The notes: generated by a model from the sequence alone, not told the origin. Shown: positions 5,922 through 64,000, counted from the first letter of the stretch. The stretch: 64,000 bases of DNA from IMGVR_UViG_3300027770_000027:124001-188000, one strand, 5' to 3'. A program made the numbers and translations.

Positions 5922-7337
5922 TTACCAAGTTATTCGTAAACTGGCAGTGCCGGCTCCTGCGGTGATTTGAATCGGTATTGTTGTAGACGATCCTACAAAG
6001 TAAGGCAGATCTAAAGATTGACCGTTTAGACCATTATATCCATCAGATCCCTTACCACCCTTACCAACCTCTCCAGGACTTCCTACTACATTTGCGGAAG
6101 CCGTGCCGGCATTTGCTATAACTATATTCTGACTAGGTTGCCCAGATCCTCCTCCACCGCCACCACCGTTTTGTTTGCTATTTTCATTTTGTCCTCCTCG
6201 GCCACCATTACCTCCAGAAGCTCCTAGAAGTGACTCAGATTGTCCCCCAGCCCCTCCAGCATTACTACCAATGAAATCTGGATTTGTTCCGTTAGCTCCG
6301 TCTGCACCATTACCACCAGACTGAAACCCCTCGCCACCAAGACCCGGATTTGGCCCCCTACCGTCATTACCAGATAACCCGTACGTAACAAAGACACTAG
6401 CTCCACCCCCACCACCACCACCGTATCCTTTTAGACCACCAGCTCCGCCACTATAAGTAGTGGAGCCAAAAATAACAGATTTTCCAGCAGCTCCTTCTGT
6501 ACCATCAATGCCATCTACACCATTTGCACCATTTGAAACACTTACTGGCACATAATACTGCTGTTCATCGGACGGATCTATAATGTAGTCATATGTTACA
6601 TTTATAGGAGCTCCATCAGCTCCATCAGAGCCAGGAGTTCCTGCGGCTCCGTGTCCCGTTACTGCTTGTAATCTAACATAACGTATTCCATAAGGCACTT
6701 GCCAGTTAAAGGAAGTAGTAGTATTTACAAAAGTTTCTCCTCCGGTGGAGGATAAGCCACCGGTCAATGTTTGTGGTTGCCATTCATTATCTGCAGAACT
6801 CCACACTAGGGCCTGTCCGTCTGTTGGAATATTAGTAGACACATTTCGTCCAAGAATTTTAACAGCATCTTCTCCAGCGGCACCGCCCACCAATAACCTT
6901 ACTAAAATTTTAGAGCCTCTTGGTGGAGCACTTGGAAATGTTATGGTTCCTCCAGCAGTTTCTGTTACTGTGTAATCTGTGGGAATTTGATTCAACCCAC
7001 CAATGCTTACTATATAGTTGTTAGAATCTGTTGAATTAAATCCATTTAATGGATAAAAACTAACAGAGGTGCCGTTTCCAACAAATTCATTAGAGGTGGT
7101 CCCTCGTATGGAAAAATTTTCTCTTCCAGTTAAAATAATATTCTGCAATCCAGCTGCAGATCCTAAAAGTTTACTATTAGCACTTAAAGAATTTACAAAC
7201 AAAGTATTAGCTGCAGATGTGGTGATGTTATTTCCAATAATAAAAGACCCTGGGTGTTGGACAACATTATTTTCTCCAGCCAAAACACCACTGGAAGGAA
7301 TTATTAATGTATTGCGGCTAACAGAAGTAAGAGGCAT
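5922..7337 (-). CDS. Glycine-rich fibre/adhesin protein (paralog 1)
   Basis: Shared N-terminal motif, beta-rich FPSAPP module, DGQALVW motif, polyglycine region. Confidence 0.7.
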   Translation of the reverse strand: MPLTSVSRNTLIIPSSGVLAGENNVVQHPGSFIIGNNITTSAANTLFVNSLSANSKLLGSAAGLQNIILTGRENFSIRGTTSNEFVGNGTSVSFYPLNGFNSTDSNNYIVSIGGLNQIPTDYTVTETAGGTITFPSAPPRGSKILVRLLVGGAAGEDAVKILGRNVSTNIPTDGQALVWSSADNEWQPQTLTGGLSSTGGETFVNTTTSFNWQVPYGIRYVRLQAVTGHGAAGTPGSDGADGAPINVTYDYIIDPSDEQQYYVPVSVSNGANGVDGIDGTEGAAGKSVIFGSTTYSGGAGGLKGYGGGGGGGASVFVTYGLSGNDGRGPNPGLGGEGFQSGGNGADGANGTNPDFIGSNAGGAGGQSESLLGASGGNGGRGGQNENSKQNGGGGGGGSGQPSQNIVIANAGTASANVVGSPGEVGKGGKGSDGYNGLNGQSLDLPYFVGSSTTIPIQITAGAGTASLRITW

Positions 7338-31857: not shown

Positions 31858-32454
31858 ATGATCAGTAAATTTAATAAATTTGAAACTCTTTTTGAGAATG
31901 CCTTTTCTGCCTTTTCTAACGGAGGATTTAGAGAAGGGACTCCGGTAATATTATTACCCAGTTTCCTTAGGAGTTCTTATTTCAGGAAGCATTACAGTGG
32001 CCATCCAAAATTTGTCAAATTTTTAAAACAATTAATAACTGACAAAGTTATGTTTTTCATTAAACACGTAGCAGGGTCAAAGGCTGGAGAAAATGTCAAA
32101 GATGCAAATGACAATGAGGGTGCTGGCAATGTTTATGTGATTTTAAAAACAGATGCCAGAACCGTTCAATGGCCTACAGAATTTAATGATTTTACAGTTC
32201 CAGGAGATTTTGATTTAATGCAAATTGTTGATAATGGAATTAATTTGCCTCCGGTTCAAGGTGTTCCTAATAGATACGAAAGGGCGGGATACACAACTGC
32301 AAAAGTTTATAAAATGGAATCAGATATTGATAATCATCCTCAAGATGATCAGACTGCTACCAAAAATACAGTTTTACCTCATACCTCACCGGAGAGAGAT
32401 AAGAAGTTAAAAACTGTAAGCCCTAAACCCTATAAGAGGAGTTCTAATTCTTAA
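31858..32454 (+). CDS. Hypothetical protein (possible internal head protein)
   Basis: 198-aa ORF; N-terminal KFETLFE. Confidence 0.65.
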   Translation: MISKFNKFETLFENAFSAFSNGGFREGTPVILLPSFLRSSYFRKHYSGHPKFVKFLKQLITDKVMFFIKHVAGSKAGENVKDANDNEGAGNVYVILKTDARTVQWPTEFNDFTVPGDFDLMQIVDNGINLPPVQGVPNRYERAGYTTAKVYKMESDIDNHPQDDQTATKNTVLPHTSPERDKKLKTVSPKPYKRSSNS

Positions 32455-33379
32455 AAGAATTTTCTAAAGCAAGAACACAGCAGAAGAAATTAATTTCTTT
32501 GTCTAGTACCTGACAATCTCTGTACATATATTCACCGAGTTCTAACATGGCGGCTTTTTTTACTGGTGCTAGTATATCTAGGTTATATACCAATTCAAAG
32601 ATTTCTTTCATCAATTGCTGATAATCCGCATTAAAGGTCTTTTCTGCTTCTATAATTTTTTTGCGAATTTCTAATGTTGAAATTTTATTAATCAAAGAAG
32701 TAATTACATGATTTGCCAGGTCTGTAATTTGATTTTCTTCAGAAATAATCAGGCTTCCTGAAATAGAAAACTTTTGCAGATCATTAATGGTTCTACGCAG
32801 ATCTGTTCCGTTCTTTTCAATCAATTTAAGAAGTCTATATTTTTGTTTTTCTTCTATTGAAATTTTTTCAGACTTAAGAATATCAACACAACGTTGTACA
32901 ATACTCTTAAGATCTGGTATCAACTTAAATAACAAACATCTAGAAGTAATTGGTTCTACAATACGATTTAAGTAATTTGCAGTAAGAATAAACCTGGTAG
33001 TGTCTGCGTATTCTTCCATCACATTACGAAGAATGCGCAGACTTTCTCCTGTTAGACCATCTGCTTCTTCCAAGATCACTACCTTCTTGTTTCCGTCAAT
33101 GGAACGTGTCTGTGCAAAACTGATAACTTTATTTCTGATAGTATCAATACCATTTTCATCACTTGCATTGATATACAAATATTGACATTTAAGAAGAGAT
33201 TTTACTATCACTTTTGCCATGGTACTTTTACCAGTACCGGGGGGTCCATAAAACAAAATATGAGGAGTGTCTTCATTAAGACTTTTAAAGTGTTCTTTAA
33301 TTTCATCCGAAAGAATAACTTCATCTAAATTTTGTGGACGATATTTTTCGACCCAAAGTGTTGTGTAATGACTAGACAT
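32444..33379 (-). CDS. gp44: Sliding-clamp loader ATPase subunit (gp44 / RFC-small-like)
   Basis: WVEKYRP, GPPGTGKS, NASDENGID, SRC motifs. Confidence 0.95.
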   Translation of the reverse strand: MSSHYTTLWVEKYRPQNLDEVILSDEIKEHFKSLNEDTPHILFYGPPGTGKSTMAKVIVKSLLKCQYLYINASDENGIDTIRNKVISFAQTRSIDGNKKVVILEEADGLTGESLRILRNVMEEYADTTRFILTANYLNRIVEPITSRCLLFKLIPDLKSIVQRCVDILKSEKISIEEKQKYRLLKLIEKNGTDLRRTINDLQKFSISGSLIISEENQITDLANHVITSLINKISTLEIRKKIIEAEKTFNADYQQLMKEIFELVYNLDILAPVKKAAMLELGEYMYRDCQVLDKEINFFCCVLALENSFKN

Positions 33380-48905: not shown

Positions 48906-49301
48906 TTATTTAAGTGATTTGTTTAATTGTTCAAGTGTTGAATTATAGAGATTAATTTCTCTTTGAGATAATTCCATGTTATTAGCAATAATATTTGCAT
49001 CCGAATCTTCTTCTTTTGATTTAGAAGAAGCTTTTTTAATGTAAGATAATTTACAACTTATTTTAGGCAAAAGAGTTTTGTAAAATTTACCAGCCAAAAA
49101 ATTTTCTTTAGACAATGGAGTTTTATACACCCATCTATTAAAAGTAACATTTACTATTTGAGCTAAAGAATTATCTGCCATAGATAACCATCTATTGGTA
49201 ATAAAAATAGATGGTATACTATGTTCTTCTGGGATCTTAGAAGACTTCTTAAGAATCCAATTTAAATAAGGAAACAGATCATCTTTATATTGAGGTTTCA
49301 T
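48906..49301 (-). CDS. Probable clamp-loader small subunit (gp62-like)
   Basis: LFPYLNWI...FITNRWLS...FYKTLLPK...YIKK pattern; TAATG overlap with the upstream stop. Confidence 0.6.
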   Translation of the reverse strand: MKPQYKDDLFPYLNWILKKSSKIPEEHSIPSIFITNRWLSMADNSLAQIVNVTFNRWVYKTPLSKENFLAGKFYKTLLPKISCKLSYIKKASSKSKEEDSDANIIANNMELSQREINLYNSTLEQLNKSLK

Positions 49302-49894
49302 TAAATGACTTTGGTGGTGGCTGTGAAACAATCTTGGATAATTTCATAAAAGATATCATCAATCTTATAAGCCAATTTTTCGACCAAGTCATCTGTAAGA
49401 TAAAGAGAGAATGCAAAACTAGGAGCTCTGCTTCCTGCACTGATATTAATTCCAAAATGTCCCAGAGCAACTGTATCTGTAACCTTAGTAATGCTTACAC
49501 TGGCTTTGCCCCAGTCTTCTTTACCATCTTCACCCATGCCCTTTTTACGAAGCATCAGATCATCTCCGTTTACTTCAACATCATAAAGTCCAAAAATATC
49601 TGTTCTAAAAAGATTAGCAATTTCTTGAACAAATAATCTTTGAAAGAAGACCGCTCCAATCGGATTCATATTAGGAATCTCCCAACATACACTTAGAGCA
49701 TCGTCTGAGTATATAAAATCATTTGATAGCTTATCTTCAAGATCAATTAAATTATCTTTAACATCCATATTGCCTCGTGTAATATAGGCAACTCCAAGTG
49801 GATTATATTCCTTGCGAAAAATTTGATATCCAAAACGATTGTGGATTAAAGATCCGTCATAGTCTTCATCATTATAAATTCTTGATCTGCTCAT
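49301..49894 (-). CDS. DUF366-family protein (biotin/lipoate-ligase-like fold)
   Basis: YDGSLI...RGNMDV...IDLED...IYSDD...FQRL...GDDL...KASVSI...HFGINI. Confidence 0.75.
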   Translation of the reverse strand: MSRSRIYNDEDYDGSLIHNRFGYQIFRKEYNPLGVAYITRGNMDVKDNLIDLEDKLSNDFIYSDDALSVCWEIPNMNPIGAVFFQRLFVQEIANLFRTDIFGLYDVEVNGDDLMLRKKGMGEDGKEDWGKASVSITKVTDTVALGHFGINISAGSRAPSFAFSLYLTDDLVEKLAYKIDDIFYEIIQDCFTATTKVI

Positions 49895-49919
49895 AAATAT
49901 ATGATAGCTGTTAACTAGC

Positions 49920-50603
49920 TTAAGTCCCGAATTTTTTTGAGAAGAGTTTTGCACTGTCCATCCAGTCTGGGGTGTTCATACTGTCTCCCAGCCCATGATG
50001 AACTACTCGAATAGGCAATACCCCCATTTTGACCTTTTTGGCGTTGCAGTCTAAACAAAAAGCCAAATCATAGTGGTGAAAATTAAAATCTTTATCAAAT
50101 TTAGCACCTTTAGTAGTCACTGCTTCTACATCAATTGCTAAGAACAAACCATCTAATACCAGAGCTCTAGAATTTGTGGGCCCGAATACAGTTGTCCACA
50201 CTCTACTATCCGCCGCATGGGCAACTTCTCCTACATGAGTAGGTCTTTCAGACATCAAATGCCACGCAGGAGCTTTGGAGAGATTGATAGATTTGGCACC
50301 AGCCAAACCAGTGACTTCATAAGGAGAATTTTGTAATTTGTCTACTAAAAGCAAATCTTCCAATTCAACATCATCATGTACAAAAAGTAAAATACTTTTC
50401 TTGTGTTTTGGATCTTCTAAAAAAGTATTGTAAAGTTTGGACAAACCTTCTTTATTATCCTTTACAATAACAAAATCAAAAACTCCTTTACGAAACAAAT
50501 CGTTGGAGTCATATTGACGCTGTAAGGATTTAAAAATTGGCCTGTTTTCAAATTCTTTGATGTCTTTTGCTTGAGTTGCAATTACTGCAGTTACTTTTTT
50601 CAT
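49920..50603 (-). CDS. GT-A (family-2-like) glycosyltransferase
   Basis: LFVHDDV, GLAGA, LDGLFLA, FHHYDLAFCL; ATGA overlap with the GATase gene. Confidence 0.8.
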   Translation of the reverse strand: MKKVTAVIATQAKDIKEFENRPIFKSLQRQYDSNDLFRKGVFDFVIVKDNKEGLSKLYNTFLEDPKHKKSILLFVHDDVELEDLLLVDKLQNSPYEVTGLAGAKSINLSKAPAWHLMSERPTHVGEVAHAADSRVWTTVFGPTNSRALVLDGLFLAIDVEAVTTKGAKFDKDFNFHHYDLAFCLDCNAKKVKMGVLPIRVVHHGLGDSMNTPDWMDSAKLFSKKFGT

Positions 50604-51238
50604 ATAAAATAAGGACTTTCGTAAGAAAATGTTCCTTCTTTTGAGAAAGAACCTTCTTTTAATTTAAACCAAATTCCATCTTCTTCAACGCATGTAGAAT
50701 CTTGAAACTGAGAAGACGAAAAAGAATCTTTATCCATCCACAATGAACTACCCGCCTTGACCACATACACCTCTCCGTCCCACACAATCCAACTGGTAAG
50801 TAATCCTTGATAGTTGGAATATGTTTTTGATATACTGTAATTTTTAATTAAATCATGGGGTATCATTTGGGAGTCCACCTCAAATGGAGGATTACTATTA
50901 ATTTCTTCAAAATTTGTTATAATACCATTGTGAGCTACAAAACAACCATCCTGGTCAAATGGGTGAGTTGTTTTGTCACTCCATTTAGTTTCTGTACTAT
51001 TAGTGGGTGCTCTGGAATGAAAAAGAAAATAATCGTAAGGTTGATTACTCAATGCTAACTTATATTGATAATTTTCAAAATCTGTATCTGTCAGGTGTCC
51101 TGGCAGTTTGTGTATAAAATATGATTTTGAGTTTCTACAAACCGCCATGAACCCCGTAGAATAACTACCTCGATGTAAATTTAATTTGTAAAGATTAAAT
51201 GCTTTTTCAAAATTTGAACTGCCTGCAATTCCACACAT
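50600..51238 (-). CDS. Class II (Ntn) glutamine amidotransferase
   Basis: MCGI N-terminus, HRG, HSRAPT, HPF, AHNGII, VDS. Confidence 0.9.
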   Translation of the reverse strand: MCGIAGSSNFEKAFNLYKLNLHRGSYSTGFMAVCRNSKSYFIHKLPGHLTDTDFENYQYKLALSNQPYDYFLFHSRAPTNSTETKWSDKTTHPFDQDGCFVAHNGIITNFEEINSNPPFEVDSQMIPHDLIKNYSISKTYSNYQGLLTSWIVWDGEVYVVKAGSSLWMDKDSFSSSQFQDSTCVEEDGIWFKLKEGSFSKEGTFSYESPYFI

Positions 51239-51242
51239 GATA

Positions 51243-51983
51243 TTATAATACTGTGCAATTATATTTTTGCCAATCAATGATTCGCGAATATTGTAGAGGA
51301 TCTACCTTTTTAAGTTGGATCCAGCCTGCCAATCTTGCTGAACAACTTGGACATTCTCCACATGACTTTTCGTGTTCGGTATAGCAAGTACGAGTTTGTG
51401 TAAAATCTACACCCAATTCAATTCCATATTCTATAATTTCTTTTTTTGTTTTATCAATTAAAGGTGCTTTAATTTCTATTTGTTTGCGCCTGTTCAAAGA
51501 AAGAATAGTATTTAACCGGTTCCTAAATCCTGGTGTACAATCCCAGAACCCAGAAGTATCATCTGCTTTGGCAGCTCCGTATAGAACATGTTCTGCTCCT
51601 ACACTTTCTGCCATACCAATTGCCAAAGACAAAAATATCATATTTCTATTGGGAACGTATGCAGTATTTTGTGGATCTCCGATAACCTCTTTCATTTTAG
51701 GAACATCTACGTCATCTCTTGTCAAGGCTGAATCAAATTTTAAAAATTTTAAAGCTAATGGAAATCTACTATACTTTATTTTTTCAGCATGTTTTGATTT
51801 AAAAATAATATTTGTAATATAATCCTCTGCTCTGGTTAATTCACTGATATTTCTTTGTCCGTAATCTATACCTAAAGCATATACTTGTTCATAATTTGTC
51901 AATGCATGATGCAAAACAACTGTGCTATCCATGCCACCACTGTATAAAACAACACAAGACTTCGGAGAAAACGATGTATCCAT
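51243..51983 (-). CDS. queC: 7-cyano-7-deazaguanine synthase
   Basis: SGGMDS, YGQRN, YVPNRN, DC, and TCY...CGECPSC Zn site. Confidence 0.93.
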   Translation of the reverse strand: MDTSFSPKSCVVLYSGGMDSTVVLHHALTNYEQVYALGIDYGQRNISELTRAEDYITNIIFKSKHAEKIKYSRFPLALKFLKFDSALTRDDVDVPKMKEVIGDPQNTAYVPNRNMIFLSLAIGMAESVGAEHVLYGAAKADDTSGFWDCTPGFRNRLNTILSLNRRKQIEIKAPLIDKTKKEIIEYGIELGVDFTQTRTCYTEHEKSCGECPSCSARLAGWIQLKKVDPLQYSRIIDWQKYNCTVL

Positions 51984-56305: not shown

Positions 56306-57670
56306 TTAAGCAATAACCTCTTTGACCACATTTCCGTATACATCTGTGAGCCTAAATGGTCTACCATTGTATTCATAAACAAGTTTGGTGTGATCAAATC
56401 CCATCAAAGCAAGCATGGTTGCATGGAGATCGTGAATATGAACAATATCTTTGACTGATTTACCTCCAGTTTCATCAGTCTCTCCGTAACGCTGCCCACC
56501 TTTAACTCCACCTCCGGCCATCCAAACACTAAAGGCTTTGCCGTTGTGATCTCTTCCTGGAGCGCCTACTCCACCACCTGCCTGGACTGTACGACCAAAT
56601 TCTCCACCCCAAACCACAAGAGTAGAATCCAGCATCCCTCTTTGCTTCAAGTCTGTAAGAAGAGCACCAAATGGCTGATCGTATCTTCCTGCAGTTCTTG
56701 TCATGGCGTTCTTAATATCCATGTGATGATCATAGCCACCTACATTCACCTGCACAAAACGAACTCCACGTTCAACCAAACGTCTTGCAAGCAACATCTT
56801 AGCCCCTTCCTCAGTTTCACCGTACAAAGCCTTTGCTTCTGCAGATTCTTTAGAGATATCAAAAGCATCAGTAGCTTCAGTTTGCATTTTAAATGCTGTT
56901 TCAAAAGCCTCGATGCGTGACTCAAGCTGGGCATCTCTTTGAAGTTTTGCGAGATGGTTTGAGTTCAGTGTATTTGCAAAATTAATCTGCCTTCTTTGTC
57001 TTTCAAGAGTAGAAAATTCGCTGCGAATGTTGGCTAAAATCTGTTCTGCTTTTATTCCTCTACGATATGATACGTTACAACCCTGATACATTCCTGGCAA
57101 GAAAGCACATTGTCTCCATTCTGAAGCTCCGTTTAAGGAAATAAATCCAGGCATGCTTTGATTCTCTGTACCCAGCCCATACACCATCCAAGATCCCATG
57201 CTAGGCTTGGAAAGCTGAGCAGATCCAGTTGCCATCATTTTTTGAGCAATATTATGATCTGGAATTTCTGTCTGCATGCTGTTAATGATAGCAATATCAT
57301 CAGCATGGCTTCCCAATTGAGACCAAACTTCTGAATAATGAATACCAGATTTTCCAAACTGTTTGAACTCAAAAGGAGAAGCTAGCAAATTGCCAAACTC
57401 ATGTTTTACTCCATCTCTCTTTTGAAGTTCTGGTTTGTAATCAAACGTGTCAACATGAGATGGTGCTCCAGTTGCAAACAAGTGAATGATAGATTTTGCT
57501 TTCACTGGCCAGTGAGGCTTTTTTGGAGCAGTTGGAGAAACTGCTTCAGCTGTCATTGGATTTAAACCATAAAGAGAAGCCAATGAAAGTCCTCCAAGTC
57601 CCCAACCAAAGTCGGTAAGGAATTCTCTACGTGTTTGTGGGTCGCTATTGTGATGTCCGCAGTCGCTCAT
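56306..57670 (-). CDS. DUF1501-family protein with twin-arginine signal
   Basis: TRREFL, PSHVDTFDYKP, ARRLVERGVRFVQ, YDHH, GEFGRT, GRDHN, DLHAT. Confidence 0.92.
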   Translation of the reverse strand: MSDCGHHNSDPQTRREFLTDFGWGLGGLSLASLYGLNPMTAEAVSPTAPKKPHWPVKAKSIIHLFATGAPSHVDTFDYKPELQKRDGVKHEFGNLLASPFEFKQFGKSGIHYSEVWSQLGSHADDIAIINSMQTEIPDHNIAQKMMATGSAQLSKPSMGSWMVYGLGTENQSMPGFISLNGASEWRQCAFLPGMYQGCNVSYRRGIKAEQILANIRSEFSTLERQRRQINFANTLNSNHLAKLQRDAQLESRIEAFETAFKMQTEATDAFDISKESAEAKALYGETEEGAKMLLARRLVERGVRFVQVNVGGYDHHMDIKNAMTRTAGRYDQPFGALLTDLKQRGMLDSTLVVWGGEFGRTVQAGGGVGAPGRDHNGKAFSVWMAGGGVKGGQRYGETDETGGKSVKDIVHIHDLHATMLALMGFDHTKLVYEYNGRPFRLTDVYGNVVKEVIA

Positions 57671-57676
57671 AAAATA

Positions 57677-58936
57677 TTAGGCTAAAAGTTCTTTTACTAC
57701 AGTCCCATTATACACTATTGCTACAGGACGTCCATCTGGAGTTTCTAGTTTAGAATCGGGATTAATTCCAATTTGATTATACATCGTAGCTGCAAGATTT
57801 TCTGGTGATAGAGCTGACTCTTCGACATCTCCGCCAGTAGCATCAGATGCTCCGTGAATATAACCTCTCTTAATACCTCCACCAGCTAGAGCTACTGAGA
57901 ATACTCTCGGCCAGTGATCTCTTCCGCCGTCTTTATTAATTTTAGGAGTACGACCAAATTCAGAACTTACCATAACAAGAGTAGAATCTAACATGCCACG
58001 TTGATCTAGATCTGTAATAAGAGCAGCATATGCTTGATCAAATGCAGGTAAGGTTTTGTTCATGTTTGCACCAATATTAGTATGCATGTCCCAACCACCA
58101 TAAGTGACAGATACAAAGCGTACTCCAGACTCTACCAACCGACGAGACATTAATAGTCTTTGACCTGCTTGATTAAGGCCATAAGCTTCTCTTAGGGCAT
58201 CTGATTCTTTAGTTAAATCAAAAGCTCCCTTCGCCTTTGGAGAAGAAATTAAATCATATGCTTGCTGATAGAAAGTATCCATTGCAGCAAGGTTGTCACT
58301 CTTTTCGAGATATCTAAAATGTTTATCTACGGTATCAAGAATACTACGTCTTTTATCAAATCGTTCTTCACTAACAGTTGATTGCAAATCTCTTACCTTA
58401 AATCCTGGAGCAGCTGGATCAGAGCCAAGACTAAAAGGACCGTAAGCGTTAGATAAATAACCAGTACCAGCGACTTCCCCATGAGCGTTAGGAACAGAAA
58501 CATAAGCTGGCAAACTATTACGACCACCTAATTGTTGAGCTGTTACTGAACCAAAAGAAGGATATGTCACAGCAGGAGATGGACGATAACCAGTAAACAT
58601 AGTGGATGTACCTCTTTCATGAGCTGCATCTCCGTGAGTCATGGAACGGACTACTGAAATTTTATCTGCAATTTTTGCTGTCTTTGCTAAATTTTCTGAA
58701 AAGTGGACTCCGGGAATTACTGTCTGCACAGATTTGAGAGGCCCTCTATACTCTGCAGGGGCTAAAGGTTTTGGATCCCACATTTCTTGCGCTGCAGCTC
58801 CACCGGGCAAATAAATGTGAATGACTGATTGAGCTTTTGGGGTGAGGGGCGACTCTGCTTGAAGTTTTAAGGCGTCTCCTAACGAAAGACCTAAACCTCC
58901 AAATAGACCAGTGTAAAGAAAATCACGTCTGTTCAT
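57677..58936 (-). CDS. DUF1501-family protein with twin-arginine signal
   Basis: MNRRDFL, WDPKP, SRRLVESGVRFV, GGWDMH, SEFGRTP, GRDHWP. Confidence 0.92.
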   Translation of the reverse strand: MNRRDFLYTGLFGGLGLSLGDALKLQAESPLTPKAQSVIHIYLPGGAAAQEMWDPKPLAPAEYRGPLKSVQTVIPGVHFSENLAKTAKIADKISVVRSMTHGDAAHERGTSTMFTGYRPSPAVTYPSFGSVTAQQLGGRNSLPAYVSVPNAHGEVAGTGYLSNAYGPFSLGSDPAAPGFKVRDLQSTVSEERFDKRRSILDTVDKHFRYLEKSDNLAAMDTFYQQAYDLISSPKAKGAFDLTKESDALREAYGLNQAGQRLLMSRRLVESGVRFVSVTYGGWDMHTNIGANMNKTLPAFDQAYAALITDLDQRGMLDSTLVMVSSEFGRTPKINKDGGRDHWPRVFSVALAGGGIKRGYIHGASDATGGDVEESALSPENLAATMYNQIGINPDSKLETPDGRPVAIVYNGTVVKELLA

Positions 58937-61105: not shown

Positions 61106-61184
61106 ATTGTTATTTAGGGGATTTTAAAAACAATGCCATAAAAATGTTTCAAGAGTGTAAATATAGAAGAACATTTTATCTTCT

Positions 61185-64000
61185 ATGGGACTCCAAATAT
61201 ACAATCAACCCCAGGTCATTAACACCCTTATAGCCACCAATATATCTTCCCCTTCTTTGAGTGGTGTTCATTATGGAGACGGTGCGCCTCTGACAGACTT
61301 AAACGCTACCAACATTAGTCAAGGCACTTTAAATAACAGTAGACTGCCGGCAGTTGCAACCTTTACTACGTCTATTTCTTCTCCCTCTGTTAGTGGAGAT
61401 GGTGCTAATTTGACGGGTTTAAACGCTACCAACATTAGTCAAGGCACTTTAAATAACAGTAGACTGCCAGCAGCTGCAACTTTTGCTACCAGTGTTTCTT
61501 CCATAACTGTCAGTGGAGATGGTGCTAATTTGACGGGTTTAAACGCTACCAACATTAGTCAAGGCACTTTAAATAACAGTAGACTGCCAGCAGTTGCAAC
61601 TTTTGCTACCAGTGTTTCTTCCATAACTGTCAGTGGTATTTTTTATGGTGATGGTAGTAATTTATCAAATTTAGACGCTGGAGATATCATCCAGGGCACC
61701 TTAAACAACAGCAGATTACCAGCCGTTGCAACTTTTACCACCAGTGTTTCATCACCGGCCTTAAGTGGTAATCATTATGGAGATGGTTCTGCGTTGACTA
61801 ATTTAAACGCAACCAACATTGCCAGTGGTACTTTAAACAATAGTAGGTTACCTGCTATAGCCACCTTTACCACCTCAGTGTCTTCCCCAGCTTTAAGTGG
61901 TAATCATTATGGAGATGGTAGTAAATTGACCGGGGTGGTTCTTTCTACCGGTGGAACCATAACCGGTGACTTGAATATCACCGGTAATTTAAGTGCTCTA
62001 GGCACCACTACTCAAATAGACACCATGGTATTTGTTACTAGTGCAGTTTCTGTAACTAATACTGGTACTGGACCTGCTTTGTATGTAAAACAAACAGGTA
62101 GTAATGATGTGGCATCATTTTATGACGACACAACTTCAGCATTAATTATTAAAGACGGTGGTAATGTTGGTATTGGAGACAGCTCTCCCGGTTCTAAGTT
62201 ATCTGTTTATTCTTCTTCTGATACGCAACCAGCAGTAACTATTACTCAACTTGGAACTGCAAATGCTCTTATTATTGAAGATTCTACGAGCCCTGATAAT
62301 ACCCCATTTGTTATTGATGCAGATGGAAACGTCTTAATAGGATTATCAGCTACGTATGCAAGTCCGTTTAACTACCCCTTCCAAATATCCAGAGCAGGAA
62401 CTAGTGGAGCCACTTTTGCAAGATTCACGAACAGCACTTCTAGCGCAGGATTGAGATTTGCAAAATCTCGTGGATCCACCAACGGAACTTTTAGTGGTGG
62501 ACTTAGCTCAGGAGACAACATTGGAGTAATAGATTACTACGGAGACAATGGGGCCCTTAGTGCAACAAGAACTGCGTGGATTGCAAACGAAGCAGACGGT
62601 CTATTTACAGCTTCCAGTGCTCCAAGTAGATTCACAATTGCTACAACAGCTTCAGGATCAACAACTCCTGTTGAACGTTTGCGGATTGATAATGTCGGCA
62701 ATGTTGGTATTGGAGATACTTCTCCAAACTCCAAACTATCAGTTTACTCCACTTCTAATACAGAAGCCGCAGTAACTATTAACCAAACCGGAACAGGAAA
62801 CGCATTTGTTGTAGAAGATTCCACGAGTCCTGATAGCACACCGTTTGTAATTGATGCAGACGGAAACGTAATTGTTGGGGGACTTTCTGCATATAATGAT
62901 TCTACTACTACTGCTTCCAATAGTCGGATGCAATTACAAGTAGTAAGACAAGGTAACATTTCTTCTAGAATGGGTATGTGGACTTTCTCCACTCAAGTTG
63001 GAGATCGTGGAATATTTTCATTTAACAAATCAGCTGCAACTACTACAGGAATTGCTTCTGCTGTTTCAATTAATGAAGACATTGGTTCTATAGATTTTAA
63101 CGGTTACGATAAAGCTGTTGTTCCTGTTTTGCAAAGAGCAGCAATGATTTTAGGGGAAGTTGACGGAGTACCACTTTCAGGATCCGTTCCCGGAAGAATA
63201 AGCTTCCTTACTACTTCATCAGGGTCTGATGATGTTACAGAAAAAATGCGGATTACCAATGACGGCAAGGTTGGTATTGGGACCGAAGCCCCGGGTGAAA
63301 AATTGACGGTAGCTGGAAACATCAGTGCCCAAGGAAACATCAGCTCTACTTTTTACGGTTCTAATGGATTCGTAAAAGACGCGCTAAATCCAGGAATTTC
63401 ATCCTTCAAATCCTCTAATTCTAGATTTGATCTTCCATCTCAAGCTGCTTTTGACAGTTCTGGCAATTTATACATTTCCAGCAATCGTGCCATTCGCAAG
63501 ATAACTCCAGCCGGTGTAGTTTCAACTTTTGCGGGTTCACCGGGACAATCCGGTACATCAAATGGTACAGGAACCGCCGCCAGATTCAACACTCCAACTG
63601 GAATGGCGTTTGATTCCAGCGGCAATCTATTCGTAGCAGACTTCGGCAATAACAACATTCGTAAAATAAGTCCAGCTGGGGTGGTGTCCTCTTTTGCTGG
63701 TTCAACTGCAGGGCTCTCCGGATCAACAAACAATTCAACGGGATCTTCTGCTAGATTTTACGGACCAATTGGTGTTGCCATAGATTCTTCTAATAATTTA
63801 TTTGTAGCAGACTCTGTCAACAACACTATCCGCAAGATAACTGCTGCTGGTGCGGTAACCACTTTTGCTGGTATAGTGGGCTCAACAGGCTCGACAGATG
63901 GGGCCGGAACCGTAGCCACATTCTGGGAACCACATGGGATCACCATAGATTCTAGTAACACGTTATACGTTGCAGATAGAAACAATGCAAAAATTCGTAA
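61185..64000 (+). CDS. Tail fibre protein with 40-aa shaft repeats, GNVGIG motifs and NHL repeats, partial (runs off window end)
   Basis: Not in the ORF track. Read from ATG 61185 (MGLQIYNQPQV...); LNATNISQGTLNNSRLP repeats; FNTPTGMAFDSSGNLFVAD NHL repeats; TAAATA at 61158. Confidence 0.85.
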   Translation, partial: MGLQIYNQPQVINTLIATNISSPSLSGVHYGDGAPLTDLNATNISQGTLNNSRLPAVATFTTSISSPSVSGDGANLTGLNATNISQGTLNNSRLPAAATFATSVSSITVSGDGANLTGLNATNISQGTLNNSRLPAVATFATSVSSITVSGIFYGDGSNLSNLDAGDIIQGTLNNSRLPAVATFTTSVSSPALSGNHYGDGSALTNLNATNIASGTLNNSRLPAIATFTTSVSSPALSGNHYGDGSKLTGVVLSTGGTITGDLNITGNLSALGTTTQIDTMVFVTSAVSVTNTGTGPALYVKQTGSNDVASFYDDTTSALIIKDGGNVGIGDSSPGSKLSVYSSSDTQPAVTITQLGTANALIIEDSTSPDNTPFVIDADGNVLIGLSATYASPFNYPFQISRAGTSGATFARFTNSTSSAGLRFAKSRGSTNGTFSGGLSSGDNIGVIDYYGDNGALSATRTAWIANEADGLFTASSAPSRFTIATTASGSTTPVERLRIDNVGNVGIGDTSPNSKLSVYSTSNTEAAVTINQTGTGNAFVVEDSTSPDSTPFVIDADGNVIVGGLSAYNDSTTTASNSRMQLQVVRQGNISSRMGMWTFSTQVGDRGIFSFNKSAATTTGIASAVSINEDIGSIDFNGYDKAVVPVLQRAAMILGEVDGVPLSGSVPGRISFLTTSSGSDDVTEKMRITNDGKVGIGTEAPGEKLTVAGNISAQGNISSTFYGSNGFVKDALNPGISSFKSSNSRFDLPSQAAFDSSGNLYISSNRAIRKITPAGVVSTFAGSPGQSGTSNGTGTAARFNTPTGMAFDSSGNLFVADFGNNNIRKISPAGVVSSFAGSTAGLSGSTNNSTGSSARFYGPIGVAIDSSNNLFVADSVNNTIRKITAAGAVTTFAGIVGSTGSTDGAGTVATFWEPHGITIDSSNTLYVADRNNAKIR
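61295..61640 (+). repeat. 120-bp near-identical tandem repeats (about 3 copies, with further degenerate copies to about 61920)
   Basis: Sequence lines starting 61321, 61441 and 61561 are nearly identical. Confidence 0.85.

What the first reader, a model, noticed from the sequence alone, without database searches (positions are those of the whole stretch)
49301..51983. QueC + stand-alone amidotransferase + glycosyltransferase + DUF366: candidate new 7-deazaguanine hypermodification pathway
Seen: four co-oriented, tightly packed genes (4-nt gap, ATGA overlap, 25-nt gap), continuing into gp62, GroES and the helicase. Known: QueC makes preQ0; fused Gat-QueC proteins make archaeosine; phages put 7-deazaguanines into DNA to resist restriction. 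As I recall, DUF366 is an uncharacterised ligase-like fold found near que genes. Inference: this is a split Gat-QueC coupled to a sugar transferase and a ligase-like enzyme, which could yield a glycosylated or acylated deazaguanine not yet described. A QueC-type nucleobase-protein conjugation is an alternative. No dpdA, folE, queD or queE is visible in this window.
Basis: partly seen in the sequence, partly recalled or inferred. Interest (0 to 1): 0.85.

Follow-up and report, generated by a model that had tools for sequence, protein, structure and literature searches.

The report
Extra enzymes in phage deazaguanine pathway
An uncultured T4-like water phage that carries every gene needed to swap guanine in its DNA for a 7-deazaguanine base also keeps a conserved four-gene block (QueC, a private glutaminase, a sugar transferase and a ligase-like DUF366 protein), which probably makes or decorates that base in a way not yet described.

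Summary
Four tightly packed minus-strand genes at 49301-51983 encode a bona fide QueC, a stand-alone class II glutaminase, a GT-A glycosyltransferase and a DUF366 protein.

- **Pathway genes outside the window.** The same contig encodes QueE, a DpdA3-family transglycosylase next to the DNA polymerase, QueD and FolE2, 33-46 kb from QueC. This is therefore a phage 7-deazaguanine DNA-modification system, a known kind.
- **Conservation.** The block is kept in at least 13 distinct relatives, down to 39% DUF366 identity, with shuffled order and different upstream flanks.
- **GT link.** In a sister clade, QueC-glutaminase is replaced in the same slot by DpdL-kinase-DpdA3, directly in front of the orthologous GT.
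- **DUF366 link.** In 71 of 79 Melainabacteria genome loci, DUF366 lies directly after QueC. Its model has a biotin/lipoate-protein-ligase-like fold.

GT and DUF366 are thus tied to deazaguanine by three independent lines. Neither is part of any described pathway.

- **"Split Gat-QueC".** This holds only by analogy; the glutaminase is not related to the Gat domain of phage 9g.
- **Still unknown.** The product is unknown. A sugar on the base is plausible but unproven, and some relatives have DUF366 with sugar genes only.

Verdict: new variant of a known kind.

The parts
51243..51983 (-). QueC (7-cyano-7-deazaguanine synthase family), 246 aa, with the PP-loop SGGMDS and a C-x8-C-x2-C-x2-C zinc motif
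   Evidence: Pfam PF06508 9e-54 and NCBIfam TIGR00364 162.4 bits against a cutoff of 150.3. Motifs were read from the translation. It is at most 37% identical to any cultured-phage QueC.
50600..51238 (-). Stand-alone class II (Ntn) glutamine amidotransferase, 212 aa, starting Met-Cys
   Evidence: PHROG 18128 and 4736 N-termini, 5e-15 and 1e-12. 172 stand-alone homologs of about 210 aa. Invariant C2, R23-G24, H74, R76, N104-G105 and D122. All five context checks seeded on glutaminase homologs (three look-ups, two viral loci) show QueC, GT and DUF366 alongside.
49920..50603 (-). GT-A fold glycosyltransferase, 227 aa, with an invariant H76-D77-D78 (DxD-type) motif
   Evidence: PF13712 4e-06. AlphaFold model pLDDT 94. 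Foldseek best match is majastridin 2qgi (a UDP complex), E 5e-11 and TM 0.67, followed by many GT-A enzymes. 371 homologs. Invariants from alignment A5. It is always directly downstream of QueC-glutaminase or of DpdL-kinase-DpdA3.
49301..49894 (-). DUF366 protein, 197 aa, with a biotin/lipoate-protein-ligase-like fold
   Evidence: PF04017 1.9e-17. AlphaFold model pLDDT 89.5. Foldseek: 2ddz (PH0223) E 1e-11 and TM 0.76, then BPL/LplA ligases at TM 0.45-0.57. Invariant acidic and lysine residues D51, E53, D54, D59, E72, R86, G110-D111-D112, K130, H146 and K195. Directly downstream of QueC in 71 of 79 Melainabacteria loci.

Best explanation
The four genes are a conserved tailoring cassette of a phage 7-deazaguanine DNA-modification system.

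Shown:
- The same genome encodes FolE2, QueD and QueE (GTP to 7-carboxy-7-deazaguanine, CDG), QueC, and a DpdA3-family transglycosylase next to the DNA polymerase.
- The cassette is kept as a unit across distant relatives.
- GT and DUF366 co-occur with deazaguanine genes in independent settings.

Inferred:
1. QueC, fed ammonia by its private class II glutaminase, converts CDG to the 7-carboxamide or 7-nitrile base (ADG or preQ0), or on to the amidine G+.
2. The DpdA3-like enzyme puts the base into DNA.
3. DUF366, an adenylate-forming-ligase-like enzyme with an acidic pocket and a conserved lysine, activates or joins a carboxylate at the deazaguanine step. CDG is the obvious carboxylate.
4. The GT-A enzyme transfers a sugar from an NDP-sugar to the base or its side chain.
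5. The result would be a hypermodified deazaguanine that hides phage DNA from host nucleases.
For: 1. The pathway is complete on the window's own contig. The DpdA3-like protein scores 8e-16 against my DpdA3 profile and 3e-10 against a type B DpdA3, and keeps the family's invariant residues. QueE scores 7.5e-15 against 9g QueE. QueD: PF01242 5e-19 and phiST QueD 4e-38. FolE2: PF02649 2e-63.
2. The nearest relatives of the DpdA3-like protein (39% identity) sit in QueE-QueD-GCHI-DpdA3-formyltransferase-QueF-QueC clusters.
3. The cassette is present in at least 13 distinct loci with DUF366 identity of 39-100%. The order is QueC-GAT-GT-DUF366 or QueC-GT-GAT-DUF366, and the upstream flanks differ.
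4. In a sister clade the slot upstream of the orthologous GT holds DpdL-kinase-DpdA3 instead. There are 14 such loci in the DpdA3-seeded set, with more in the neighbour-seeded sample, and GT overlaps DpdA3 by 4 nt. These GTs form one clade (support 99/99) nested inside the QueC-type GTs. Otherwise similar phages carry either version.
5. QueC-DUF366 are adjacent, with a 4-nt overlap, in 71 of 79 Melainabacteria loci.
6. Folds and catalytic residues.
7. An NDP-sugar epimerase/dehydratase is inserted between the glutaminase and GT in some relatives.
8. There is precedent for ATP-dependent amide ligation on a carboxylated DNA base: CmoY (PMC12783734).
9. DpdA is taken as the signature of deazaguanine in DNA (PMC10516641).
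Against: - No chemistry is known and no DNA was analysed.
- DUF366 is absent from 5 of the 13 sister-clade loci that include the gene after GT. It is present with only sugar-nucleotide or GT genes within 8 kb in marine relatives and in L012.
- The sister clade's DpdL is proposed to make plain 7-deazaguanine, which has no C7 side chain for a sugar.
- The phage has about ten further glycosyltransferases in an island 20 kb away, so a GT is not special in this genome.
- The swap to DpdA3 is a single evolutionary event.
- Most loci were found by searching with the cassette's own genes, which biases the sample.
- The region is a variable slot, where unrelated genes could gather.
Confidence: 0.55

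Rival explanations
1. Only QueC and the glutaminase belong to the deazaguanine pathway, giving a known base such as dADG, dPreQ0 or dG+. GT and DUF366 are neighbours in a variable island and act on something else: virion proteins, a host glycan or another DNA base.
For: The slot between the upstream genes and DUF366 is variable. Marine relatives hold a sugar-nucleotide cluster there (epimerases, DegT, PfkB, HAD, nucleotidyltransferase), and L012 holds four GT-like genes, with no que gene in reach. The genome has a large separate GT island. DUF366 is dispensable in some DpdA3-GT loci. DpdL's proposed product offers no side chain.
Against: GT is never seen in this slot without a deazaguanine module directly upstream, in about 45 loci that cover the slot. 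The one exception is L169, where the upstream region may lie off the contig end. Two different deazaguanine modules occupy the same position in front of it. QueC-DUF366 adjacency recurs in bacteria that have no GT or phage context. No homolog of this GT was found in any cultured phage.
Confidence: 0.3
2. The cassette is a functional equivalent of fused Gat-QueC and simply makes archaeosine (dG+) in DNA, as in phage 9g. GT and DUF366 play no chemical role on the base.
For: A class II glutaminase sits next to QueC and all its catalytic residues are conserved. Gat-QueC phages make dG+ (PMC10516641). No QueF is seen near the cassette or in the roughly 100 kb of the contig examined.
Against: The glutaminase is not related to the 9g Gat domain, E 0.03. 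The genes are separate and not always adjacent. This reading leaves the conserved GT and DUF366 linkage unexplained. QueC itself needs one ammonia, so a glutaminase does not by itself imply amidine formation.
Confidence: 0.1
3. The genes boost or redirect the host's queuosine-tRNA precursor supply, or make a free deazapurine metabolite, without modifying phage DNA. Alternatively, QueC conjugates a deazaguanine to a protein, as in type IV CBASS or Qat systems.
For: Some phages carry que genes without proven DNA modification. QueC-DUF366 in Melainabacteria is presumably a cellular (tRNA or metabolite) function.
Against: A DpdA3-family gene lies beside the DNA polymerase in the same genome. No tRNA genes are in the window. 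QueC scores as an equivalog of true QueC, whereas QatC scores 19 bits against a cutoff of 280. No CD-NTase or TGT/OGG partners were seen.
Confidence: 0.05

Closest known systems
DpdA3-type phage systems: Cellulophaga phage phiST (dDG) and Campylobacter phage CP220 (dADG); Cui et al. 2023, PMC10516641
   Same: The gene set is FolE, QueD (the same CxxxHGY QueD subtype as phiST), QueE and a DpdA3-family protein. CP220 is also T4-like and also carries a QueC.
   Different: The genes here are scattered over 46 kb rather than clustered. FolE2 is used instead of FolE. The DpdA3-like protein is only 20-27% identical to the phiST-type DpdA3 proteins. A stand-alone glutaminase, a GT-A enzyme and DUF366 are added. 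None of these three has a homolog in those phages.
Gat-QueC of Enterobacteria phage 9g and Crenarchaeota (archaeosine / dG+)
   Same: A class II glutaminase works beside a QueC module. The 9g QueC domain is 29% identical, E 1e-23.
   Different: The genes are separate and in the order QueC then glutaminase. The glutaminase is unrelated to the 9g Gat domain; its relatives are the N-terminus of Pseudomonas phage PA11 gp004, in an amidoligase cluster.
Tailoring modules on phage deazaguanine: QueF with DpdN (formyl-preQ1) and DpdM (methyl-preQ1)
   Same: These are accessory enzymes next to core que/dpdA genes that diversify the base. A T4-like relative of this DpdA3-like gene has exactly such a cluster.
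   Different: The accessory enzymes here are a glycosyltransferase and a ligase-like protein. No sugar- or acyl-bearing deazaguanine in DNA turned up in the library searched.
Biotin protein ligase / lipoate protein ligase (class II aaRS-like adenylate-forming ligases) and PH0223 (PDB 2ddz)
   Same: The fold matches: 2ddz TM 0.76 and BPL/LplA TM 0.45-0.57. A conserved lysine lies on a strand (K130).
   Different: The BPL and LplA signature motifs were not established. DUF366 is a single 190-aa domain with no known substrate. No paper on the family was found.
CmoX/CmoY carboxymethylcytosine system (PMC12783734) and glucosyl-hmC of T4
   Same: The logic is the same: a carboxyl or hydroxyl handle on a DNA base is extended by an ATP-dependent amide ligase (some with a glutaminase domain) or by a sugar transferase.
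   Different: The base is different (a purine analogue) and the enzyme families are unrelated. T4's glucosyltransferases are GT-B fold (own knowledge), whereas this one is GT-A.
Huimycin and dapiramicin, N2-glycosylated preQ0 natural products of actinomycetes (own knowledge, not checked here)
   Same: They show that a glycosyltransferase can use a 7-deazaguanine base as acceptor, at the 2-amino group. That would also fit a base with no C7 side chain.
   Different: They are free secondary metabolites, not DNA. No homology between the enzymes was tested.

Membership tests
Phage 7-deazaguanine DNA modification system (Hutinet 2019; Cui 2023) | A DpdA-family transglycosylase is encoded in the genome | tested here: met
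   A 285-aa protein lies next to DNA polymerase on the window's own contig (contig 212990-213847). It scores 8e-16 against my DpdA3 profile, 3e-10 against a type B DpdA3 and 7e-6 against phiST DpdA3. It shares 22 invariant columns with DpdA3, including K-P-x-H-x-L-G-x-G and S-x-D. Pfam does not detect it, and does not detect the type B DpdA3 of L028 tested alongside either.
Phage 7-deazaguanine DNA modification system (Hutinet 2019; Cui 2023) | Genes for the base: GTP cyclohydrolase, QueD, QueE and (for preQ0/ADG) QueC | tested here: met
   FolE2 PF02649 1.9e-63. QueD PF01242 4.9e-19. QueE 7.5e-15 against 9g QueE, with only a weak Fer4_12 Pfam hit. QueC is above the NCBIfam equivalog cutoff.
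Phage 7-deazaguanine DNA modification system (Hutinet 2019; Cui 2023) | A 7-deazaguanine nucleoside is present in virion DNA | not testable with these tools
   The phage is uncultured and no mass spectrometry or raw read signal is available.
QueC (TIGR00364 / PF06508) | Score above the curated cutoff, a PP-loop, and a four-Cys zinc site | tested here: met
   162.4 bits against 150.3. SGGMDS and C-x8-C-x2-C-x2-C were read from the translation.
Gat-QueC (fused archaeosine-type synthase) | An N-terminal class II glutaminase fused to QueC in one polypeptide | tested here: not met
   There are two genes, in the order QueC then glutaminase, with GT between them in L014 and L024.
Gat-QueC (fused archaeosine-type synthase) | The glutaminase is homologous to the Gat domain of Gat-QueC | tested here: not met
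   BLASTP against 9g gp06 gives E 0.028 over 24 residues. PA11 gp004 N-terminus gives 7e-19.
Class II (Ntn) glutamine amidotransferases | An N-terminal Cys nucleophile, an Arg for the glutamine carboxylate, an Asn-Gly oxyanion hole and an Asp for the amino group | tested here: met
   C2, R76, N104-G105 and D122 are invariant in 21 sequences. The mapping onto GlmS residues is from my own knowledge.
GT-A glycosyltransferases (PF13712-like) | GT-A fold with a DxD-type metal/nucleotide-sugar motif | tested here: met
   Model pLDDT 94. 2qgi (UDP complex) E 5e-11 and TM 0.67. H76-D77-D78 are invariant. Pfam is at the cutoff, 27.1 against 27.
DUF366 (PF04017) | Pfam score above the gathering cutoff and a PH0223-like fold | tested here: met
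   63.8 bits against 29.9. 2ddz TM 0.76.
Biotin/lipoate protein ligases | Signature substrate and ATP loops (GRGRxGR in BPL; the LplA lipoyl-AMP motif) and the catalytic lysine | tested here: inconclusive
   There is only fold-level similarity, TM 0.45-0.57 with 8-17% identity. An invariant K130 exists, but residue-level equivalence was not established. DUF366 is therefore described as 'ligase-like', not as a member.
QueC-like protein-conjugating enzymes (QatC / type IV CBASS Cap9) | Match to the QatC-type model and partner genes (TGT/OGG, CD-NTase) | tested here: not met
   NF041925 scores 19.1 bits against a cutoff of 280. No such partners appear in the 20 kb around the block.

The most novel reading that the evidence does not exclude
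GT and DUF366 act on the deazaguanine itself, so this abundant group of freshwater and marine T4-like phages carries a sugar-bearing and/or N-acylated 7-deazaguanine in its DNA. As far as I know, that would be the first glycosylated purine analogue reported in a genome. DUF366 would then be a missing, general enzyme of 7-deazaguanine metabolism shared by phages, Melainabacteria and archaea.
Probability: 0.35. Interest if true: 0.9.

Novelty: new variant of a known kind. Interest (0 to 1): 0.72.

Why it matters
**Where the field stands.** 7-Deazaguanine bases are one of the main ways phages shield DNA from restriction enzymes and CRISPR nucleases. Eight derivatives are known, and all are small.

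**What this cassette adds.** It brings three enzyme families not yet linked to the pathway: a private glutaminase, a GT-A sugar transferase and DUF366. It is widespread in uncultured aquatic T4-like phages.

**If the sugar transferase and ligase-like enzyme act on the base:**
- the known chemistry of DNA purine modification would widen;
- new enzymes for labelling DNA would become available;
- some sequencing and restriction oddities of environmental viral DNA might be explained.

**A separate lead.** QueC-DUF366 adjacency in Melainabacteria gives a first functional handle on a family whose structure has been public since 2007 (PDB 2ddz) with no function assigned. That lead is directly testable with cheap assays.

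Tried and rejected
- **DNA similarity to cultured phages:** none.
- **DUF366 in cultured phages:** the only hit, 'Microcystis phage MaAM05', is identical to Vampirovibrio chlorellavorus DNA, so it is bacterial sequence.
- **Literature on DUF366, COG2029 or PF04017:** nothing.
- **Genome scan with the phage DUF366 alignment:** nothing found. The bacterial homolog worked as a query instead.
- **'Split Gat-QueC by descent':** rejected. A Bacillus phage gene labelled 'GATase / QueC' is only a 224-aa QueC.
- **The 359-aa protein next to the primase as a hidden DpdA:** rejected. It is fast-evolving and scores E 0.3 against the DpdA3 profile.
- **The GT homolog in marine DUF366 loci:** absent. The 220-aa neighbour there is unrelated.
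- **Promoter and terminator scan:** at chance level, so not informative.
- **QueC compared with the Campylobacter phage QueC and with Gat-QueC:** no special closeness, 27-29% identity.
- **CDG-pathway genes or QueC in the sister clade:** none within 36 kb of one contig or in 109 neighbour-seeded loci. This remains unresolved because whole genomes could not be read.
- **Contig coverage:** about 100 kb of the 227-kb contig was examined (positions 124-224 kb). The first 124 kb was not.
Full report
**Observation.** The window is part of a 227-kb T4-like phage contig (IMG/VR UViG_3300027770_000027, which is JGI Ga0209086_10000004). Window position equals contig position minus 124003.
- QueC runs 51983-51243. 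It scores Pfam 9e-54 and TIGR00364 162 bits against a cutoff of 150, and carries the PP-loop and the four-Cys zinc motif.
- The next gene, 51238-50600, starts Met-Cys-Gly-Ile-Ala-Gly. It matches only the N-terminal glutaminase part of GlmS-like and phage 'aminotransferase' families. In 21 homologs the class II glutaminase residues are invariant: C2, R76, N104-G105 and D122.
- The third gene, 50603-49920, touches the Pfam cutoff for PF13712. Its model (pLDDT 94) is a GT-A fold. The closest structure is the UDP-binding majastridin (E 5e-11, TM 0.67), and H76-D77-D78 are invariant.
- The fourth gene, 49894-49301, is DUF366 (1.9e-17).
- The 'gp62' label of the next gene could not be confirmed. The GroES-like protein matches Cpn10 only weakly, below the cutoff. 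The helicase carries Helicase_C_2.

**The rest of the pathway.** No dpdA, folE, queD or queE lies in the window. I walked along a near-identical genome and then confirmed the result on the window's own contig. On the opposite strand, 33-46 kb from QueC, the order is gp46, QueE, a 433-aa protein, DNA polymerase B, a DpdA3-like protein, ThyX, UvsX, QueD, gp41, gp32 and FolE2.
- The DpdA3-like protein scores 8e-16 against a profile I built from nine DpdA3 proteins, and it keeps their invariant residues.
- Its 39%-identical relatives lie inside QueE-QueD-GCHI-DpdA3-formyltransferase-QueF-QueC clusters of another T4-like phage. That is the formyl-preQ1 layout.
- QueD has the same CxxxHGY motif as the QueD of Cellulophaga phage phiST.
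- Cui et al. 2023 treat DpdA as the signature of deazaguanine in DNA.

The phage therefore belongs to a known kind of system.

**Is the cassette a unit?** Homolog searches gave 267 DUF366, 371 GT and 172 glutaminase relatives. All are single-domain and all come from metagenomic, T4-like contigs. A local profile scan of every fetched locus shows the following.
- All four genes are present in at least 13 distinct loci, with DUF366 identity from 100% down to 39%.
- The order is either QueC-glutaminase-GT-DUF366 or QueC-GT-glutaminase-DUF366.
- Upstream flanks differ: primase, tail-fibre genes or unknown genes.
- Three relatives have an NDP-sugar epimerase/dehydratase inserted between the glutaminase and GT.
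- All five context checks seeded on glutaminase homologs (three look-ups, two viral loci) showed the full block.

**Independent links of GT and DUF366 to deazaguanine.**
- *GT.* In locus L028 the gene overlapping the start of the GT is a strong homolog of phiST DpdA3 (3e-61). It is preceded by homologs of phiST CGPG_00066 (a small kinase-like ATPase) and CGPG_00067 (DpdL, carrying the LxxxHRHxF motif). Scans with DpdA3 alignments found 14 such T4-like loci. A sample seeded on neighbouring core genes found more.
- *One swap.* The GT tree places these GTs as one clade (support 99/99) inside the QueC-type GTs. One deazaguanine module therefore replaced another in the same slot, in otherwise similar phages.
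- *DUF366.* Its only 'phage' hit among cultured records is really Vampirovibrio DNA. Among 79 Melainabacteria genome loci, 71 have a canonical QueC (1e-55) directly upstream of DUF366, with a 4-nt overlap in the example read.
- *Fold.* The DUF366 model (pLDDT 89.5) matches PH0223 (2ddz), then biotin and lipoate protein ligases. It has a dense set of invariant acidic residues and K130.
- *Family size.* The family is small: 488 clusters among 1.84 billion representatives.
- *Literature.* No paper mentions the family.

**What does not fit.**
- DUF366 is missing from 5 of the 13 DpdA3-GT loci that include the gene after GT.
- In marine relatives and in L012, DUF366 sits at the same position next to sugar-nucleotide genes or other GTs, with no que gene within 8 kb. 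Their que and dpdA genes could lie elsewhere, as they do here, but this was not checked.
- DpdL is proposed to give plain 7-deazaguanine, which has no side chain. If so, a sugar would have to go elsewhere on the base, or GT has another target.
- The phage also has a 10-kb island of about ten other glycosyltransferases and methyltransferases.
- The glutaminase is not a detached Gat domain of Gat-QueC.

**Mechanism proposed** (the steps are inferred, not shown).
1. FolE2, QueD and QueE make CDG.
2. QueC, with glutamine-derived ammonia, makes ADG or preQ0, or possibly G+.
3. The DpdA3-like enzyme installs the base in DNA.
4. DUF366 activates or ligates a carboxylate at this stage. CDG is the natural candidate, and CmoY gives a precedent for amide ligation on a carboxylated DNA base.
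5. GT adds a sugar from an NDP-sugar.

I put about 0.8 on the block being part of a DNA deazaguanine system. I put about 0.55 on GT and/or DUF366 acting on the deazaguanine, and about 0.35 on a truly new hypermodified base.

**Novelty.** The core system is known. New here are a stand-alone glutaminase paired with QueC, a GT-A enzyme tied to two alternative deazaguanine modules, and DUF366 as a QueC partner in both phages and bacteria. No report of a glycosylated deazaguanine in DNA was found. I file it as a new variant of a known kind, of high interest to specialists and readily testable.

Noticed in passing
L028, L118-L120, L125-L133, L137 and further loci in L149-L257 (e.g. L224, L229): A sister group of T4-like phages carries DpdL-kinase(AAA_18)-DpdA3-GT-(DUF366) in the same slot. 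No cultured phage has this DpdA3-GT arrangement; cultured DpdA3 hits are limited to the Cellulophaga phiST group and Chryseobacterium phage MA9V-3.
   Followed up: yes
L037-L116 (e.g. L077:5318-6004 and 6001-6555): In Melainabacteria (Gastranaerophilales and relatives), a HEAT-repeat protein, QueC, DUF366 and a SPOR-domain protein form a conserved gene string. In Vampirovibrio itself the upstream neighbour of DUF366 is a penicillin-binding-type gene instead.
   Followed up: partly
L001 (MW495066.1, 'Microcystis phage MaAM05', 108417-124956): This stretch of a 274-kb 'phage' record is 99-100% identical at protein level to Vampirovibrio chlorellavorus genomes. It carries glyS, fliM, secF and fabI. 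The record looks like bacterial DNA filed as a phage.
   Followed up: partly
L032 / L141 (contig about 194-206 kb, just beyond the window's right end): A roughly 10-kb island of glycan genes: two GT2, Nucleotid_trans, DUF268, GT47/RXYLT1, an epimerase, a GT10 fucosyltransferase, GT25, two methyltransferases and GT1. This points to heavy glycosylation of something by this phage.
   Followed up: no
window 61182-64000 (+), running off the end: A 1557-aa protein with NHL/TEN-like repeats on the opposite strand. It explains the apparent lack of ORFs at the end of the window. SegE-type GIY-YIG, UvsY and a UvsW-like helicase follow it.
   Followed up: no
window 56306-57670 and 57677-58936 (-): Two adjacent DUF1501 proteins (sulfatase-like family), unusual cargo for a phage replication region.
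   Followed up: no
L021-L023 (marine contigs; protein seen in 114 collection blocks): Marine relatives hold ThyX and a large sugar-nucleotide cluster directly upstream of DUF366: three epimerase/dehydratases, a DegT aminotransferase, an HAD phosphatase, a PfkB kinase, a nucleotidyltransferase-isomerase fusion and a cupin. A 278-aa RXYLT1_C-like protein follows DUF366.
   Followed up: partly
L026:15299-15808 and L029:16143-16649: A type I phosphoribosyltransferase lies 5-7 kb from the cassette in two relatives. It is weakly similar (2e-5) to the phosphoribosyltransferase of phiST. It could turn a free deazaguanine base into a nucleotide.
   Followed up: no
L146:4219-10334: Another T4-like phage contig has QueE-QueD-GCHI-DpdA3-like-formyltransferase-DUF3310-QueF-QueC followed by a Vut_1 (YhhQ-type) transporter. 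It is a formyl-preQ1-style cluster with a precursor transporter.
   Followed up: partly
L033 (Pseudomonas phage PA11, 432-6234): The nearest cultured-phage relative of the glutaminase is the N-terminus of PA11 gp004. It sits in a cluster with a second glutaminase, a COOH-NH2 ligase, an amidoligase and a RimK-like ligase, which looks like an uncharacterised modification pathway.
   Followed up: no
The clamp-loader gp44 is at 32444-33379, not adjacent. The gene is nevertheless the constant right-hand anchor of the variable slot in all relatives.
   Followed up: partly
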